DNA of 64,000 nucleotides. Source: Mizuhopecten yessoensis (lineage: Eukaryota). The notes under the pieces were generated by a model. The model was not told the DNA's origin. It made no database searches and worked only from the letters and a program-made list of their open reading frames with translations. A program made the position numbers and the translations under genes. Numbering within the stretch: position 1 is the stretch's first letter; each line of letters begins with the position of its first letter. Below are positions 3,128 to 15,900 of this stretch, piece by piece. The stretch covers positions 71,617 through 135,616 of the forward strand of contig NW_018408757.1 of NCBI RefSeq assembly GCF_002113885.1, given 5' to 3'.

Positions 3128-3519
3128 GTTTTCTCTGCCTCTTATGTTCTTTTTTAACTTATACTTTATATTTAAAATTAAAAATGACCGCCTTATCGAC
3201 AGTCCACACAATTTCGTTCAATAGTTCGATTTTTCCCCGGAACAAATTCTTGCATGGACAAATACAGTGAACACCGTAAATCCGACCTTGCCCTCCACGA
3301 GGGAGTTGTTTTTGGAAGTTAATTCGAACTTTTCTCTTTGCTCATTTTGTGAAGAATCCAGGCGTGAATGTATTTGTTGATTGTATGGGAACCTAACAAC
3401 AGTCGGTAGATTCTATAACAGACTCGTTATTTGACATGTCGTCAGAAACTGAGGAACCGTGGATACGAGACGCGTGAAACTGATAGCGTTTGAAGTGAGT
3501 GATCTTACGACGGAGCACA

Positions 3520-3635
3520 GGTTCGTTACAAATGTCTGAAATGTTTATGTGTGCTGTGACTCATATCAGTAGGTCTGTAACATATGTGTCCGTAGGTCTA
3601 TAGAAAATGTGTATTTCAGACATTTGTAACGAACC
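3520..3635. mobile_element. Small MITE-like element with 23-bp perfect terminal inverted repeats
   Basis: GGTTCGTTACAAATGTCTGAAAT ... ATTTCAGACATTTGTAACGAACC; no clear TSD. Confidence 0.7.
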
Positions 3636-4589
3636 CCTATTGATCAGTGCAGTGTAACAGACGATATTTCTGATAAATTGCATGAGCGTTAAAAATTGTT
3701 TCCATTGCCGGCATTGGTGATTTCAACCGATGTGCATTTTGTACGATATTGGAGACCTTGGTCTTGTTTTCTTTGTAATAAAGGTGTTTTTTTTATTTTA
3801 TTTTTTATTTTGCACATACACAATGACATTGTCAAATCTCACAATGCCCAGCGATATTTCAGCAGCCTTCATGTTTATTTATATTGGATATTGTAGTTCC
3901 GGTCAGTGTTGTATATAAGCTAAGAATTGTGTCTCGTGATGCAATTGTAATTAAAGTCCCATCAACGACACAGCTTTCAAAGAGGCTATATAGTGACAAT
4001 GCCATGCAAATGTAAATTTATAGTAGTATTATACACCTTTTCAACAAAAAAACCCTTCTTATTTACATTTAATCTTTATAAACTACTGTGTTAAAAAAAT
4101 ATGATGATTTTCCCCAAAACTCCTGTGTTTTACTAATATTCAAAATTAGATATACAAGGTACTATATTCGCCATTGTATAATTGTTCAAGTAGAGTCGAT
4201 GTAGCTTATACCTGCATATCTGTCATATAGTCCTAGGAAAAGGACAAAATATGAAGGCACGCGTCAGCTTAGTCACAAGGTTATGCTTCCAAATTAAGCT
4301 AGACGCCAGTGTGAAGATGTTTAGCTTTCACACAAGTTGATTTTCCGATTAATTTGATTTCTGTGGTAAGGAGTAGTAAATTGGAAGTAACAGTACAACG
4401 GATATGCCGTACATTACGCTATAGCGTCAAAATCCAATCAGATTACAATCAAATTACTCCAAGTGTGACGTGGACCAAACTTTAGAACTGACCCCAGACT
4501 CTGTCAGCACCGATCAATACAGAGTATCCAACAGGCTTCTCTTAAATATTCTCACTAAGTAGAGTTATAGTCGCCATGTCCGACTATAC

Positions 4590-10410: not shown

Positions 10411-11399
10411 GTCCGGGATATGGATGAGTCCGGGCTAGCACCTCGAGATCTGCTGGCTGAAGTTTTAACACGTTTAGTGCTCAAAATTGGGTGTAACATT
10501 TTTAGGTAAACAGACAGATATTAATTTTTGAGATTAATATAATATTTCATTTGATGAATCACATTATACTATATATGTTAACTGTTAGTTCTTTACCATA
10601 TGAAATGCTGTTTTAATCCGCACTATGTTAGTGTATATCATGTCAATTTTTACCATTTGCTATATTATTAGCATGGATGTATAAAACACTTATACAGGTG
10701 TAGAGATAGCGTTTTAACATTCATCGTATTTTTTTTTATATCAATAACTTGACCAAAGTGTCAACTAAGCCTTGTGATATTATTAAAAAAAATGTGCAAT
10801 TAATTATCTAACCTATGGGACACTACAGTGTGTTTTTTCTGTAAATGTAAAAAAAAAGTCTGTTATAATATTTATAACTTATTACTACTATTACATTATG
10901 TTATTGTTAATTTATGTTGTGTTATTGTAGCAATAACAGCTCTCATCCAAGAGCTAATGTTCCATGTTAACACGTATGCGACTTTAATGTAACTAGCTAG
11001 CTGAATGTTAAATTGTTCACTCCTCAACAGTCAGAAAGATATCTTTTGTTATATTAAATTTTATTCTTTGTCACCCTTAGGTGACCGTTAAGGAAAGGCC
11101 CTTGTTTTATCTAGTATTTTTAAAGAGTCTGACCGGCGACGTTTCTTGTTGCTTGCTGCAAGAGTTATGTCCCGTTAATATATTTTTATCATTAATATCA
11201 TTACTCGTTCTTTACTCGATTTCTTGTTATTTGATTCGATCTATATAATAATTAAAGCAAATCAGACGTTAGAAAGACATTTGAACGAAGTAAACATATA
11301 TTTGTTTTTGTTTTGGTTGGTGATTTTACCCAGGATGCACCGCGTAAATAGTTTCAAAATGGAGCACATAGCAATGGTTTGAGACCGGAGAGCATCACA

Positions 11400-11413
11400 G
11401 TATCTAGGGAAAC
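11400..11413. promoter_or_regulatory. RFX X-box-like motif in the putative IFT140 promoter/5' exon
   Basis: GTATCT-AG-GGAAAC fits GTHNYY-N2-RRNAAC. A second X-box-like site GTTGCGTCTAAAGCAAC lies at 11541-11557, and candidate donors lie at 11461/11470. IFT genes are established RFX targets. Confidence 0.55.
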
Positions 11414-11930
11414 AATATATTTAAGGACATATTCCATGTTTTAACGTCATGCTTACATAGGTATATATGGTAGGTATTCAATCTATTGAACTATTTCTGT
11501 CAATAATCACGAATAATTTCTTAAGGACATAACACACGAAGTTGCGTCTAAAGCAACCCCCCCGCCTGTGATAACTTGTAGTACACATGTTTGGTGGTTC
11601 TAGTTATGTGTCCTCACGATTCATTTGGTTACCTAGAAAGTAAAGATACAATTTGGGCCAATTAAATTTCAAATATGTTGGACATTAGTCAGAAATGCAT
11701 TAATGACTTAATAAAATGTAACGGGTTAACTCCAGCAACTACTAAAATCAGTTCTACTGGATGTTTGCTTTTTGCTTCAAGAGATGTATCTGTGAAGTAA
11801 AAAGAATATTTTGCAAATTTGAGGAAGACACAGAAGTTGTAATTACAATATGTTTGAAAATCAAAACATTTTGAAGGCTATAGGACTTAATATGTGATAT
11901 ATAATGTGCACAAGCAAATGGTACTCCTAT

Positions 11931-12316
11931 TGTAACAGGGGAAGAAAAATGCACGTCCAGACCAGAATTCAAACCTGGGACCATTCAAACTCTAGATGGT
12001 TGCTCTATACCAATTAAGCTACCTGGTCGCTGACAATTGACCCAATCCAGTTCTGCTACATTCCTCCCTCCTTTTTCTAAGTCTTCGCCACCGAAAACAC
12101 AACTATTTACAACCCAGGCTCGGGTATCCCCGTGCCAAACATACACCAAATGCTTGAGACAAGGGTTGGTCACATGCACCACTGTAACAGGAGAAGAAAA
12201 ATGCACTGCCAGACAAGGGTTCCAACCCGAAACCCTCCAGACTCTAGACGGACGCTCTACCAATTGAGCTACCTTAAGCTTGTCGTCGACGATCGACCCA
12301 GCCCAGTTCCACTACA
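11931..12316 (-). mobile_element. TRIM (miniature non-autonomous LTR retrotransposon) with tRNA-derived Pol III unit in each LTR (biv-TRIM/Helenus-like)
   Basis: Direct repeats 11931-12060 and 12183-12316, both TGTA..TACA. 4-bp TSD CTAT at 11927-11930 and 12317-12320. On the minus strand, PBS-like TGGTGCATGTGACC follows the 5' LTR by 1 nt and PPT GAAAAAGGAGGGAGGAA abuts the 3' LTR. Each LTR has an A box TAGCTYAATTGG, a B box GGTTKGAA and a T5 run. Confidence 0.9.
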
Positions 12317-12985
12317 CTATAACATAAGATGCTGTTTGGCAGGCTGTTTTATTTTTATCGGAAGTTAATGATGTCTGTTTTTATGTAACCAAGGGTAAAA
12401 AGGAAATATTTTCTTATCAGACATAACTGTGCCGAATGCGACCTCTTCATTTCCAAAGCACTCTTTCTTTGATGAAATATGGCATGAACAACTCTCTTAA
12501 ATAATTCAAACTTCATGACAATGATCATGTAGTAACATTTATGTCATCACATGGTATCTTTCACTTTTTTTGTTTGGATATATTGTCTTTCTCATTTAGA
12601 AAGATAAAAAAACCTCATTATTATTATTATATTAATGACATTGACCAAAATTTCTTCTGAATTAAGAATGGATTTGTTGAAATGAATATTTATTGGACCC
12701 TGTTGAACTCAGAAGTGCAAGTAAATTAAAGATGCTATAATTTGTCCAGATCCGAACTTTGAAATTTTGATTGTCAGCATCAGGCAAATCAGCCATGAGA
12801 ATTTTGATAGATCTAAAGAGGTTACACAAGAAATCAAAAGATTTAAGTTTTCTACCAGAACACATACATCATTTTATCAACATTAAACAACTCCATTGTC
12901 TTTTTCAACTTTTAAGTGCATCTTTCAGTTTCAAATTAACATACATTTTCAGTTGACTGTTTTGTGAACATAAAGTGCCAGCAAC

Positions 12986-15900
12986 ATGGCTGTGTATTTT
13001 GATCACCGCCTGGAAACTGACCGATCTGGGATCAACACAGATGCGTCATGGTTCAGTGGTGCCCCAATGATCGCCGTCACATCATACAGTGATGAGAATG
13101 GTGGCACTGTCAATCTTTTTTTGGAAGAGGTAATATATATATATATATAGCATTTCAAATCAGTGTTTGTATTTCTATAAGTGTATGTATTATTTAAGAA
13201 TTGAACTGATAATCATTTTAGTCTTTTGCATATATGTATATAGGTAAACATGTAATTGCAATGGATATTTTTCACCCAAAATGAAGAGATGTGTGGAATT
13301 TAAGTTATAAAACGGCATCATGTTATATTTATATATATGTATATCATATGGGGCAAAGAAGTAATTCCAACAGTCTGGACAATCCGTTCCTTTATCAAGA
13401 CACAGTGAAACAGAACAGTTACATAACATACATATGCATCATATTACAAGAAGATGGAACTGATATACTATAATTGAAAATAAAGCTTATCATAGTTATA
13501 CTGCTGATATTTATGGAGAAAAAAAAAGATAAATCTAAGAATGATTTTAATAAGATATGAAAATAATTGAAAATCTTTATTACGCTATTCCGTTCATATT
13601 TTTTAGGGTGAGAAATTGTTGAATATTCCATTACATCGTGCGGGTCAAGCAACCTCTGTGGCATGGCACCCGACAAAGAAAATTGTTGCAGTTGGCTGGG
13701 AAAACGGAGAACTGCTGGTTTGGAATGAAGTTGACCATGAGTTATTTGAAGGTTTACCACTACACAAAACAGCCATCACAGTTTTACACTGGAGCTCCTC
13801 TGGCTCTCGACTGTCTTCTGGGGACAAGGTGAGATAAAAGATTTTATGTTTAAACTTTATTTTGTGCTTACAAGTACTTTGTAGCTGGTGTCTATGTGAA
13901 GTATAATATTTTGATAACCATGGCAGTACATGAGGTTTAAAGCGAATATCAATAACAGGGGCGTGTGGTATTTATAGTGTATGGTTGACTTTAAAAGCTT
14001 TATACTAACCTGTTGGCAGTGTGTACATTTTGATAGTTAGAGTACTCACAGGCAGATTTTGAAAAAAAAATGATAGTTAAAGCTGTATTATCCTTGTGAA
14101 TAATGAAATTGTTCAGTTACCCTGACATAAAAATCTACTCGCCCTGTGCTCTAGTTGGTTTGACCTGTTTATTGTCTATACAAATATGTTTTCTGTACAA
14201 TGACCTATTGACCTGCATATTGTAGAAAAAACTTGATTTAAGTAGAAAGTTTTTGTATTTTTGTGTCACCTTGAATGAAGTGCCAGTTAAGCTTATGGTA
14301 TGGTGTGTTGTCAGTCAACATTTTCTTTGGACAACTTCTTAAGAACTGCAGGTCCTATGGCCATGATATTTGGCTAGTAGGTACATGGGCTACAATGCTA
14401 CAAACAGTCGTCAAATAATTTACCTTGACCTAGTTTCAAGGTCACAGGGGTTAAATGTGTTAAAAACCTTTAAACAAATTCTTCTGAATAACCAAGAGAC
14501 CTAGAGCAATCATATCTGGTCAGTAGGTACCTGAGATGGACTGCTATAAACTTTCCTCAAATAAATTACCATAACCAGGTGTCATGATGTGAAATATATA
14601 AATATCTTTAAACAAACTCTTCTGAATAACCAGGAGGCTCAGAGTGATGCCATACCTGCCAACCCCGGATATACTGAAAGAGGGTGATGACCCTCTTTTG
14701 AAAATAAAAAAGAGGGTCATAGCGCGCGATGTCTTTTTTTCACAACAAATATAAGAAGAAAAGTATATGCAGATATTAAATCAGAACTTTAATATTTCAA
14801 TGTTGTAAAAGGTACATTCTACATTCATTGAACTATTCTTCCAGCAGATCTAGCTGATCCTCATTCACAATACCAGGTTCAAAGCTGAAAAATAAAAAAG
14901 TTTGTCAGCAACACAACAAAATTAATTCATAATAATAAATATGATACTGTGTATTCACAGGCATTTTTTATGTCAATTAAAATGGTCCTGACAATAACTT
15001 GTCAATAAGATGTCACATTCTTCTCATGTAAAATACCATTTTGTTTCTGTCAATAAAAATGGTCCTGACAATTAGAAGTCGCACACTACTACTCATATAA
15101 AATTTCAGTTTTATACGAGTAGGGTTTGAATTCTTATTGTCAGGATCATTTTGATTTACAGAAACAAATCATCAAATGCCTGTACGTGTTATTGGACGTC
15201 TAAGTAACGTCGTTTTTAGCACCAGATCCAACTGAAATATGTGATTAACAAAGAGTGCAGAATGGAGCGTTTGGTCCAAGACCGCCAGACTTTATCCACT
15301 ATAACTCATTTTCCTACGACATTTGATATACATGTGCACAATTATCTTTTCTTTTAGCATTTCGTAGAGTAGAATCTCCTAGTCCCGATAACGAATTCTT
15401 CCTTCAAGAAGACACACAAAATTACCTTCAAAATACAATCTATACTACGTAAATACTATTGTAAAAACAACTCAATTATTCATTAAAACACCTCACTAAT
15501 TACTTGTCGGTAAGTTCAGTAACAACAGTCTTTATATAAACATTTGTAAAAAACAGTTCTAGTGCGTATATAAACAACTTACAAGTTACCTGTCTGTGAG
15601 AAATGGAAACGGGAAATAGATCATCTTTTTTTTTATGACAAAGGATGCAAAAGTCTAGAGAATTCCGAGTGACTTTGGTAACTTCTAATATAAGAAAAGA
15701 TTCTGGGCAAAACAGGTGAAATGGACGAAATCCGGGGCAAAATCGTAACCCAGCGGGTGAAGGGCTAAAATCCCGGGTGTAACCCAACAAAATCGGGTTA
15801 CTTGGTAGGTATGTGATGCTACTTGGCCAGTAGCTGTATATAGGCACCTGGCATGAAGTGCTATAAACTGTTGTCAAATAAATGACCTTGACCTATTTTC

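What the first reader, a model, noticed from the sequence alone, without database searches (positions are those of the whole stretch)
11927..12320. Miniature LTR retroelement whose LTRs are tRNA-like Pol III genes (SINE/LTR hybrid), antisense just upstream of the IFT140 start
Seen: a 386-bp element with two ~130-bp direct repeats (TGTA...TACA), a perfect 4-bp TSD (CTAT), and a 122-bp non-coding core. On the minus strand the core starts with a PBS-like TGGTGCATGTGACC and ends with a PPT, GAAAAAGGAGGGAGGAA. Each LTR folds as a tRNA: GACCAG..CTGGTC acceptor-like stem in the 3' LTR, D-arm/A box TAGCTCAATTGGTAGAGC, 7-nt loop CTAGAGT, B box GGTT(T/G)GAA, then TTTTT. Known: Cassandra TRIMs carry 5S sequence in their LTRs, and tRNA-carrying TRIMs (biv-TRIM, Helenus) have been described, so the class is not wholly new. 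Inference: it is transcribed by Pol III yet reverse transcribed and integrated by a Gypsy-like partner (4-bp TSD). The PBS loosely resembles the complement of the tRNA-His 3' end. A T5 terminator inside the 5' LTR raises the question of how a full-length template is made.
Basis: partly seen in the sequence, partly recalled or inferred. Interest (0 to 1): 0.8.

Follow-up and report, generated by a model that had tools for sequence, protein, structure and literature searches.

The report
Old Helenus tRNA-LTR mini-retrotransposon copy
This is a worn-out 387-base copy of Helenus, a class of tiny non-coding LTR retrotransposons with tRNA-like repeats that was described in 2024, lying backwards in the first intron of a scallop IFT140 gene; it is ordinary, although its particular family is not in the published list for this species.

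Summary
Window 11931-12317 (sense = minus strand) is 5'LTR (135 bp), core (122 bp) and 3'LTR (130 bp), flanked by CTAT on both sides. The core begins with a PBS-like site and ends with a polypurine tract. Each LTR carries a tRNA-like module followed by T5.

It belongs to a large old family in this genome. At least 580 cores were found, and 42 copies I examined all have the same layout. Of 32 simple copies, 10 have a perfect 4-bp target duplication and 12 match at 3 of 4 positions; shifted controls gave no perfect match. LTRs of better-kept copies pass Rfam's tRNA threshold.

This is Helenus (Kojima 2024), already reported from bivalves including Mizuhopecten yessoensis. It is not biv-TRIM, which has no described tRNA module.

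This family is not among the four listed for the species. Its LTR matches Helenus-2_PeMa and Helenus-1_ArIr. Its core is of the tRNA-His type instead of their tRNA-Lys type.

The window copy is a fossil. Its LTRs are 76% identical to each other, and both B boxes and the PBS are mutated. Spliced RNA reads place it inside the 5'UTR intron of IFT140, not in the promoter.

Pol III transcription and mobilisation by a Gypsy partner remain inferences; no partner was found.

The parts
11927..11930 (.). Target-site duplication, left copy (CTAT on +; ATAG in element sense)
   Evidence: It is identical to 12318-12321.
11931..12060 (-). 3' LTR (130 bp, TGTAGC...TGTTACA in element sense)
   Evidence: It is 77-83% identical to LTRs of other copies.
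11954..12028 (-). tRNA-like module of the 3' LTR. The A box carries a 2-nt insertion (12021..12002). The loop is CTAGAGT. The B box is decayed to GGTTTGAATTC (11975..11965).
   Evidence: Rfam RF00005 scores it 28.9 bits over model positions 1-71, against a gathering score of 29.
11945..11949 (-). T5 run of the 3' LTR: putative Pol III terminator and inferred R/U5 border
   Evidence: A run of at least four T stands at this position (19 nt before the LTR end) in 95% of 77 LTRs of the family.
12061..12077 (-). Polypurine tract GAAAAAGGAGGGAGGAA, directly before the 3' LTR
   Evidence: GGAGGGAGG is kept in 67% of 42 cores.
12081..12098 (-). Hairpin just upstream of the PPT (7-bp stem, G-rich tetraloop; typical form GTCTTCG-GGGG-CGAAGAC)
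   Evidence: It appears in the minimum-energy folds of the core. By eye, the stem covaries among the published Helenus consensus sequences.
12061..12182 (-). Non-coding internal region (core), 122 bp
   Evidence: It is 87-95% identical to the cores of other copies, so it is better kept than the LTRs.
12168..12181 (-). Primer-binding site, mutated here to TGGTGCATGTGACC (family form TGGTGCCTGTGACC)
   Evidence: Host tRNA-His(GTG) ends ...TGGTCACGGCA, to which CCA is added. The family PBS therefore matches 7 nt, has one extra T, then matches 7 more nt.
12183..12317 (-). 5' LTR (135 bp, with a 6-nt insertion at the acceptor-like stem)
12211..12274 (-). tRNA-like module of the 5' LTR. The A box TAGCTCAATTGGTAGAGC is intact (12271..12254). 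The loop CTAGAGT is at 12247..12241. The B box is decayed to GGTTGGAACCC (12227..12217).
   Evidence: Rfam RF00005 scores it 17.8 bits, a partial match.
12197..12201 (-). T5 run of the 5' LTR
12318..12321 (.). Target-site duplication, right copy (CTAT)
11469..12951 (+). Host context: intron 1 (5'UTR intron) of IFT140, which contains the whole element in antisense. Exon 2 starts at 12952 and the ATG is at 12986.
   Evidence: A splice joint 11468>12952 (GT..AG) is seen in 2 reads of RNA run X19, 8 reads of X24 and one 786-nt contig of X1. The exon translations match IFT140 residues 1-48 (E 0.032) and 60-124 (E 1.7e-15).

Best explanation
The stretch is an ancient, inactive copy of a Helenus-type TRIM (class 'TRIMp3'). 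This is a non-coding LTR retrotransposon of about 380 bp whose LTRs carry a tRNA-derived module with A and B boxes, followed by a T-run. The window copy inserted into what is now the 5'UTR intron of IFT140 and made a 4-bp duplication (shown).

How the family most likely worked is inferred, not shown. Pol III starts at the tRNA-like module of the 5' LTR. A fraction of transcripts reads through the first T-run and stops at the T-run of the 3' LTR. That gives an RNA of about 340 nt in which the tRNA-like module is the terminal repeat R. Host tRNA-His primes minus-strand synthesis at the PBS, and the PPT primes the plus strand. A Gypsy-type reverse transcriptase and integrase supplied in trans do the copying and the insertion.

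The family combines the LTR lineage of the published Helenus-2_PeMa and Helenus-1_ArIr with a core of the tRNA-His type. The window copy can no longer do any of this, because both B boxes and the PBS are mutated and its LTRs have drifted to 76% identity.
For: Layout and TSD.

Family size: 3400-4064 first-look candidates and 580 PBS-region 22-mers with at most 2 mismatches.

tRNA nature: 15 of 20 LTRs in 10 loci score 31.5-52.1 bits against Rfam's tRNA model, gathering score 29. ARAGORN calls many of them tRNA(aga) of 72-75 nt. An A-box pattern is present in 86% of 77 LTRs, a B-box pattern in 64%, and a run of at least four T in 95%, at a fixed distance from the LTR end.

PBS: host tRNA-His(GTG) genes were found and confirmed.

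Class: Helenus is defined by tRNA-like LTRs, a PBS, a PPT and 4-bp TSDs in animals. It is reported from M. yessoensis, and several bivalve families use tRNA-His (PMC10886601).

LTR and pre-PPT homology to Helenus-2_PeMa and Helenus-1_ArIr was read by eye from Data S1, at roughly 85-90% for the LTR.

A tRNA-Lys version with the same LTR exists in this genome. LTR identity between the two versions is 0.78-0.81, against 0.82 within the family. The first 50 nt of the cores are unrelated, at about 0.48.

Age: the best copy-to-copy identity is 89% and mean identity within LTR pairs is 0.834.
Against: No transcript of this or any other copy was shown to start at the tRNA-like module. RNA reads on the element fit it only in part and come from other copies.

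The PBS does not pair perfectly with host tRNA-His. Every copy carries a 1-nt insertion, and no tRNA with a perfect complement turned up.

No autonomous partner was found. The three candidate loci I could read were sub-variants of the same TRIM.

The comparison with the published consensus sequences was made by eye, not computed.

I could not query Repbase or Dfam, so the family may already be deposited under some name.
Confidence: 0.9

Rival explanations
1. The element is a Helenus-type TRIM, but the template RNA for reverse transcription is made by Pol II, from host read-through or an unrecognised LTR promoter. On this view the tRNA-like module yields only short dead-end Pol III transcripts that stop at the T-run.
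For: A run of at least four T follows the tRNA-like module in 95% of LTRs, which would stop most Pol III transcripts inside the 5' LTR. RNA-seq runs, including one polyA-selected library, hold reads of family members. Kojima states that Pol III use by Helenus has not been validated experimentally.
Against: The A box, B box and T-run are conserved between families of different scallop genera. That is hard to explain without a Pol III role. The total length of about 380 bp fits Pol III. For Cassandra, transcription is reported to start and end within the 5S module of the LTRs (as cited in PMC10886601).
Confidence: 0.2
2. The stretch is two independent tRNA-derived SINE insertions that happen to flank 122 bp of unrelated DNA.
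For: The two repeats are only about 76% identical, no closer to each other than to other copies.
Against: The same 122-bp core sits between the same repeats in all 42 copies examined, and at least 580 cores exist. The TSD flanks the whole unit. The core starts with a PBS and ends with a PPT. The repeats have no A-rich or simple-repeat tail.
Confidence: 0.01
3. The tRNA-like modules are working tRNA genes, so this would be a tRNA gene expansion carried by a mobile element.
For: Some copies elsewhere score up to 52 bits against Rfam's tRNA model and fold as cloverleaves.
Against: In the window ARAGORN finds nothing, and Rfam scores are below the gathering score. The anticodon AGA would read serine codons, but the module lacks the long variable arm of tRNA-Ser. 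Kojima takes this kind of isotype disagreement as a sign of non-function.
Confidence: 0.02
4. The fossil copy has been co-opted as a regulatory element of IFT140, for example an intronic enhancer or a TFIIIC-bound insulator.
For: It lies in the 5'UTR intron, 669 bp before the ATG. SINE-like Pol III modules are known to be co-opted in other genomes (general knowledge; discussed in PMC10886601).
Against: There is no sign of constraint. It is the most diverged LTR pair of the 32 simple copies (0.757), both B boxes are lost, and CpG observed/expected in the 3' LTR is 0.32. No RNA starts there.
Confidence: 0.04

Closest known systems
Helenus (TRIMp3), Kojima 2024, PMC10886601; nearest published LTRs are Helenus-2_PeMa (Pecten maximus) and Helenus-1_ArIr (Argopecten irradians)
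   Same: It is a TRIM of about 350-390 bp with LTRs of about 130 bp running TGTAGC...CCTGTTACA. The tRNA-like module has A and B boxes and a downstream T-run. The hairpin before the PPT and the PPT (..GAAGACTT..GGAGGGAGG) are shared, as is the 4-bp TSD. By eye, LTR identity to a natural copy here is about 85-90%.
   Different: Those two families have a core of 90-93 bp with a tRNA-Lys PBS (TTGGCGCCCAAC). The window family has a 122-bp core with a tRNA-His-like PBS. The tRNA-Lys version also exists in this genome, at lower copy number.
tRNA-His-type scallop Helenus families (Helenus-4_MiYe, Helenus-2_MiYe, Helenus-3/4/5_PeMa, Helenus-4_ArIr)
   Same: The PBS begins TGGTGCC. The core carries the motif GAACCTGGGTTG, then a hairpin and a PPT. 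The core of Helenus-4_PeMa is 120 bp, against 122 bp here.
   Different: Their LTRs are 153-174 bp, with a different sequence upstream of the tRNA module (..ctagcttc..gggaatttccctttagctca..). None of the four families listed for M. yessoensis has the window's LTR.
Cassandra (plant TRIM with 5S rRNA in its LTRs)
   Same: It is a small-RNA-gene module with a Pol III promoter and terminator inside each LTR of a TRIM. It also forms tandem arrays, and it raises the same puzzle of a terminator inside the 5' LTR.
   Different: Its module is 5S rRNA, not tRNA. It is found in plants, is 565-860 bp long and makes 5-bp TSDs. Rfam gives no 5S match here.
biv-TRIM (Satovic et al. 2019, PMC6934838)
   Same: It is a bivalve TRIM with solo repeats and tandem arrays.
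   Different: Its terminal repeats are 202-218 bp and its core 77-80 bp, with PPT GGGGAGA. It has no canonical PBS and no described tRNA module, and it was not detected in M. yessoensis. Its conserved TGATCCCAAAGGAC is absent from the window.
tRNA-derived SINEs (SINE2)
   Same: They have a tRNA-derived Pol III promoter head and are short, non-coding and present in high copy number.
   Different: SINEs have no LTRs, PBS or PPT, are mobilised by LINEs and make TSDs of variable length. Here the tRNA module is duplicated as part of the LTRs and the TSD is a fixed 4 bp.

Membership tests
Helenus (TRIMp3) | TRIM architecture: two short LTRs (TG..CA) around a short non-coding internal region, within the published length range of 311-1263 bp | tested here: met
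   The parts are 135 + 122 + 130 = 387 bp. The same layout is seen in 42 copies.
Helenus (TRIMp3) | tRNA-derived sequence with box A (TRGCY..YGG) and box B (GGTTC) inside each LTR | tested here: met
   At family level, 15 of 20 LTRs pass Rfam's tRNA gathering score. An A-box pattern is present in 86% of LTRs and a B-box pattern in 64%. In the window copy the A box is intact in the 5' LTR, both B boxes are decayed, and the Rfam scores are 28.9 and 17.8 bits.
Helenus (TRIMp3) | PBS next to the 5' LTR, complementary to a tRNA 3' end | tested here: inconclusive
   The host tRNA-His 3' end predicts the PBS TGGTGCCGTGACCAGG. The family has TGGTGCCTGTGACCAAC, which matches 7 nt, has one extra T, then matches 7 nt. 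The window copy adds a C>A change. No perfectly matching tRNA was found.
Helenus (TRIMp3) | Polypurine tract directly before the 3' LTR | tested here: met
   GAAAAAGGAGGGAGGAA stands at 12077..12061.
Helenus (TRIMp3) | 4-bp target-site duplication (animal Helenus) | tested here: met
   CTAT flanks the window copy on both sides. Of 32 simple copies, 10 are perfect and 12 match at 3 of 4 positions. Shifted controls gave 0 perfect.
Helenus (TRIMp3) | Transcription by RNA polymerase III from the LTR module | not testable with these tools
   RNA reads on the element match only in part and come from other copies. No starts or ends were resolved. This step is also unvalidated in the literature.
Helenus (TRIMp3) | Mobilisation in trans by a Gypsy-superfamily element sharing the PBS region | tested here: inconclusive
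   A pattern search for the PBS outside the Helenus LTR context gave 27 places. The three I could read were TRIM sub-variants.
biv-TRIM | Terminal repeats of 202-218 bp, a core of 77-80 bp and the conserved core segment TGATCCCAAAGGAC | tested here: not met
   The sizes here are 130-135 and 122 bp. The segment is absent from the window even with up to 2 mismatches.
Cassandra | 5S rRNA-derived module in the LTRs | tested here: not met
   An Rfam scan of 11000-13500 at E up to 10 gave tRNA matches only and no 5S match.
tRNA-derived SINE | Single tRNA-derived head with a LINE-type tail, no LTR/PBS/PPT, and TSDs of variable length | tested here: not met
   The module is part of a duplicated LTR, and a fixed 4-bp TSD flanks the whole unit.

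The most novel reading that the evidence does not exclude
The window's family may be an uncatalogued Helenus family, and possibly the most abundant one in this scallop. It would have arisen by a modular exchange: the LTR and the hairpin-plus-PPT end of a tRNA-Lys-type lineage (Helenus-2_PeMa-like) joined to the PBS and leader of a tRNA-His-type lineage. That would be a concrete case of a TRIM switching primer, and presumably Gypsy partner, by recombination.

A related point is the short hairpin with a purine-rich tetraloop just upstream of the PPT. Its stem covaries among published bivalve and nemertean Helenus families. It may be the cis signal through which the Gypsy machinery recognises these TRIMs.
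Probability: 0.35. Interest if true: 0.4.

Novelty: new member of a known kind. Interest (0 to 1): 0.22.

Why it matters
It matters little for biology at large. The class, its structure, its 4-bp TSD, its presence in this species and its presumed dependence on Gypsy elements were all published in 2024.

There are three modest points of value. First, annotation: hundreds to thousands of these LTRs look like tRNA genes and will inflate tRNA predictions in scallop genomes. This family appears to be missing from the published list, although by a comparable count it is commoner than a listed one. That count was 580 hits for its 22-mer against 223 for the 29-mer of Helenus-4_MiYe, each with at most 2 mismatches.

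Second, the same LTR occurs with two unrelated PBS/leader modules in one genome. That gives a clean handle on how TRIMs change primer and partner.

Third, the conserved hairpin before the PPT is a testable candidate for the recognition signal.

Tried and rejected
1. Host tRNA with a perfect complement to the family PBS. The pattern TTCRA-N7-CACAGGCA gave 93 places against 32 in the control. None looked like a tRNA: they were another repeat plus one deleted TRIM copy.

2. Autonomous partner. I searched for the PBS with positions of the Helenus LTR end excluded, which gave 27 places against 2 in the control. The three loci I fetched (L086-L088) are diverged sub-variants of the same TRIM. I did not try to read them by another route.

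3. Young copies. A second search seeded with a better-kept natural copy found nothing above 89% identity.

4. Expression of this copy. RNA reads on 11996-12343 fit only in part (0.87-1.0 run on into unlike sequence) and have zero depth in both flanks. They therefore come from other copies, and this says nothing about Pol III use.

5. The Cassandra paper (PMC2311327) is not held. I used only what Kojima reports about it.

6. Pfam on three short ORFs at 9.6-10.4 kb gave no family.

7. The two-row majority line that DNA alignment printed was not used.

8. I did not compute identities to the published consensus sequences, because that would have meant typing long sequence. Those comparisons are by eye.

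9. Two independent SINE insertions and a functional tRNA gene were both considered and rejected (see rival explanations).
Full report
**What is there.** In element sense (the minus strand), window 12317..11931 reads as follows. The 5' LTR is 135 bp (12317..12183). A single G comes next, then TGGTGCATGTGACC. The whole core is 122 bp (12182..12061) and ends in GAAAAAGGAGGGAGGAA. The 3' LTR is 130 bp (12060..11931). CTAT stands immediately outside both ends.

Each LTR runs TGTAG...TGTTACA. Each contains a tRNA-like module with an A box, a 7-nt loop CTAGAGT and a B-box-like GGTT(G/T)GAA, followed by T5. Rfam's tRNA model gives 28.9 bits for the 3' LTR, just under the gathering score of 29, and 17.8 bits for the 5' LTR. 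ARAGORN calls nothing. The two LTRs are only about 76-79% identical.

**Is it more than chance, and is it one element?** The window's own genome (987,588,634 bases in 82,659 contigs) gave 3400-4064 first-look candidates. Dozens of scored matches were full-length, at 80-89% identity. In 42 unique copies the order is always LTR (about 128 bp), core (about 122 bp), LTR.

Among the 32 simple full-length copies, the four bases outside the two ends are identical in 10 and match at 3 of 4 in 12. Controls shifted by 4, 8 or 12 bases gave no perfect match. A 5-bp reading is not supported, because it also fits in only 2 of the 10 perfect cases. The 22-mer at the PBS occurs 580 times with at most 2 mismatches, against 1 in the control. 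Some loci are arrays of the form LTR-core-LTR-core-LTR, for example C3184:820843-821468 and C5570:78797-79673. This rules out two independent SINE insertions.

**The tRNA-like LTR.** In better-kept copies the module reads GACCAGG-TA-GCTC-AATTGGTA-GAGC...CTAGAGT...CCGGG-TTCGAAC-CCCGG-TCTGGCC. Fifteen of the 20 LTRs in ten loci pass Rfam's tRNA gathering score, at 31.5-52.1 bits. ARAGORN calls many of them 'tRNA-Ser(aga)' of 72-75 nt. That is a type-I length without the long variable arm of a true tRNA-Ser, so they are pseudo-tRNAs.

Across 77 LTRs, an A-box pattern is present in 86% and a B-box pattern in 64%. A run of at least four T is present in 95%, almost always 19 nt before the LTR end.

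**The primer-binding site.** The host has at least 14 exact copies of the searched tRNA-His 3' end, and ARAGORN confirms tRNA-His(GTG) at the loci I checked. The gene ends ...GGTTCGAATCCTGGTCACGGCA. With CCA added, the expected PBS is TGGTGCCGTGACCAGG. The family has TGGTGCCTGTGACCAAC in 23 of 42 cores exactly over the first 14 nt. That is seven matching bases, one extra T, then seven more matching bases.

The window copy has a further C>A change. I found no host tRNA with a perfect complement. 'Loosely resembles tRNA-His' is therefore accurate. Pairing would need a one-base bulge, or only a 7-nt PBS is used.

**What it is.** Kojima (2024, PMC10886601) defined Helenus as TRIMs with a tRNA-derived sequence in the LTRs, a PBS, a PPT and, in animals, 4-bp TSDs. 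The paper groups Helenus with Cassandra and Ajax as 'TRIMp3'. It reports 51 families in pteriomorph bivalves, among them four in Mizuhopecten yessoensis (assembly ASM211388v2). It also reports that bivalve families use tRNA-Lys, His, Ile, Pro, Glu or Ser as primer, and that only Gypsy elements resemble their PBS regions.

The window genome is that species or a very close relative. A 29-mer from the published core of Helenus-4_MiYe occurs 25 times exactly and 223 times with at most 2 mismatches. From memory, the assembly size and contig count also fit.

None of the four listed M. yessoensis families has the window's LTR. Their LTRs are 151-159 bp with different sequence upstream of the tRNA module.

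By eye, the window family's LTR is homologous along its whole length to Helenus-2_PeMa-LTR (129 bp) and Helenus-1_ArIr-LTR (130 bp). I counted about 14 differences in 130 positions against a natural copy. The last ~40 nt of the core are shared too (..GTCTTCG-RGGG-CGAAGACTT..GGAGGGAGG).

Those two published families, however, have cores of 90-93 bp with a tRNA-Lys PBS. The PBS side of the window family instead resembles the tRNA-His group (Helenus-4/5_PeMa, Helenus-4_ArIr, Helenus-2/4_MiYe). The shared features are TGGTGCC... and the motif GAACCTGGGTTG.

The tRNA-Lys version with the same LTR also exists in this genome, with 26 junction matches (L082-L085). Its LTRs are 0.78-0.81 identical to the His-type LTRs, against 0.82 among His-type copies. 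The last 45 nt of the cores are 0.65-0.79 identical. The first 50 nt are unrelated, at about 0.48. So one LTR lineage carries two different PBS/leader modules.

I could not query Repbase or Dfam, so 'not catalogued' refers to the 2024 paper only.

**Not biv-TRIM.** Satovic et al. (2019, PMC6934838) describe terminal repeats of 202-218 bp, a core of 77-80 bp, PPT GGGGAGA and no clear PBS. They describe no tRNA module and found no hit in M. yessoensis. Their conserved 14-mer is absent from the window.

**State and age of this copy.** Identity within LTR pairs averages 0.834 across the 32 simple copies. The window copy is the lowest, at 0.757. Identity between LTRs of different copies averages 0.816, and no two copies exceed 89%. 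The family therefore amplified long ago from a fairly uniform source, and I saw no young copy. Only the best 40 candidates are scored per search, so rare young copies cannot be excluded.

In the window copy both B boxes are lost (GGTTGGAACCC and GGTTTGAATTC). The 3' A box has a 2-nt insertion and the 5' LTR a 6-nt insertion. The PBS is mutated. CpG observed/expected in the 3' LTR is 0.32. It is a fossil.

**Host context.** The ORF starting at 12986 aligns to residues 1-48 of human IFT140 (E 0.032, weak but in register). The next exon aligns to residues 60-124 (E 1.7e-15).

RNA reads join 11468 to 12952 across GT..AG. This joint is seen in 2 reads of run X19, in 8 reads at 6 start positions in X24, and in a 786-nt contig of X1 that continues through 13127>13605. 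The element therefore lies inside the 1,483-nt 5'UTR intron of IFT140, antisense to the gene and 669 bp before the ATG. It is not in the promoter.

Reads laid on the element itself fit only in part, and depth is zero in both flanks. They derive from other family members.

**How it most likely works.** This applies to the family and is inferred. If Pol III starts at the tRNA-like +1 and the T-run is its terminator, the tRNA-like module is the R region. About 33 nt upstream of it would be U3, and the last ~14 nt of the LTR would be U5.

A template of about 340 nt then requires read-through of the first T-run and termination at the second. The conserved T-run argues that termination there matters, because it defines R/U5. 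Kojima's paper does not address it for Helenus.

tRNA-His priming, PPT priming and integration with a 4-bp stagger by a Gypsy-type integrase follow from the anatomy and the literature. No partner was identified here.

**Verdict.** This is a decayed member of a known kind, from a family that appears unlisted for this species. Another window of this scan in the same genome reached the same reading (finding s1-507916). Interest is low.

Noticed in passing
window 12081-12098 (minus strand); published Helenus cores in PMC10886601 Data S1: A short hairpin with a purine-rich tetraloop sits 2-15 nt upstream of the PPT. By eye, its stem covaries among published bivalve and nemertean Helenus families: GTCTTCG/CGAAGAC, GTGTTCG/CGAACAC, AACTCG/CGAGTT, GAGATTTCTTA/TAAGAAATCTC, GTTGTG/CACAAC and GGTCACG/CGTGACC. 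The loops are AGGA, GGGG, AGGG or GGGA. The 2024 paper does not mention it. It is a possible cis signal for the partner's machinery.
   Followed up: partly
L082:62-415, L083:66-340, L084:120-406, L085:185-270: The same LTR type occurs with a different core of 90-102 bp carrying a tRNA-Lys PBS (TTTGGCGCCCAAC). This looks like the counterpart of the published Helenus-2_PeMa and Helenus-1_ArIr. It is also not among the four families listed for M. yessoensis. There were 26 junction matches with at most 2 mismatches.
   Followed up: partly
G000:C3184:820843-821468 (L002/L005); C5570:78797-79673; C5253:31314-31867; C1185:528316-529765: These are tandem arrays of the family (LTR-core-LTR-core-LTR). 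At C1185 there is a satellite-like array in which the PBS 14-mer recurs every ~104-150 bp.
   Followed up: partly
window 11469-12951 and 13128-13604: IFT140 has a non-coding first exon ending at 11468. Intron 1 is 1,483 nt and intron 2 is 477 nt, both GT..AG and both supported by spliced RNA reads. The ATG at 12986 lies 34 nt into exon 2.
   Followed up: yes
window 13301-13474: A multi-copy repeat lies inside IFT140 intron 2. Raw-read RNA depth there is up to about 25 per strand column, several times that over the neighbouring exons, and summed contig depth exceeds 10,000. Almost all of it comes from reads that match only in part, with sharp edges near 13346 and 13382. It is AT-rich with imperfect inverted repeats around it. 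Its identity is unknown.
   Followed up: no
G000:C5519:1315-7883: Five copies of the tRNA-His(GTG) 3' end lie in a head-to-tail array, with start-to-start spacings of 1,477, 1,477, 1,478 and 2,115 bp. ARAGORN confirmed the first two as tRNA-His(GTG) genes. Further clusters are on C1454, C1908 and C5399.
   Followed up: no
G000:C1298:254341, C2966:342939, C5349:254500, C76737:735968: An unrelated repeat contains the same 14-mer as the PBS, in the context AAGATTTAAACATATGGTGCCTGTGACC. A related repeat, in diverged form, is seen twice in L085.
   Followed up: no
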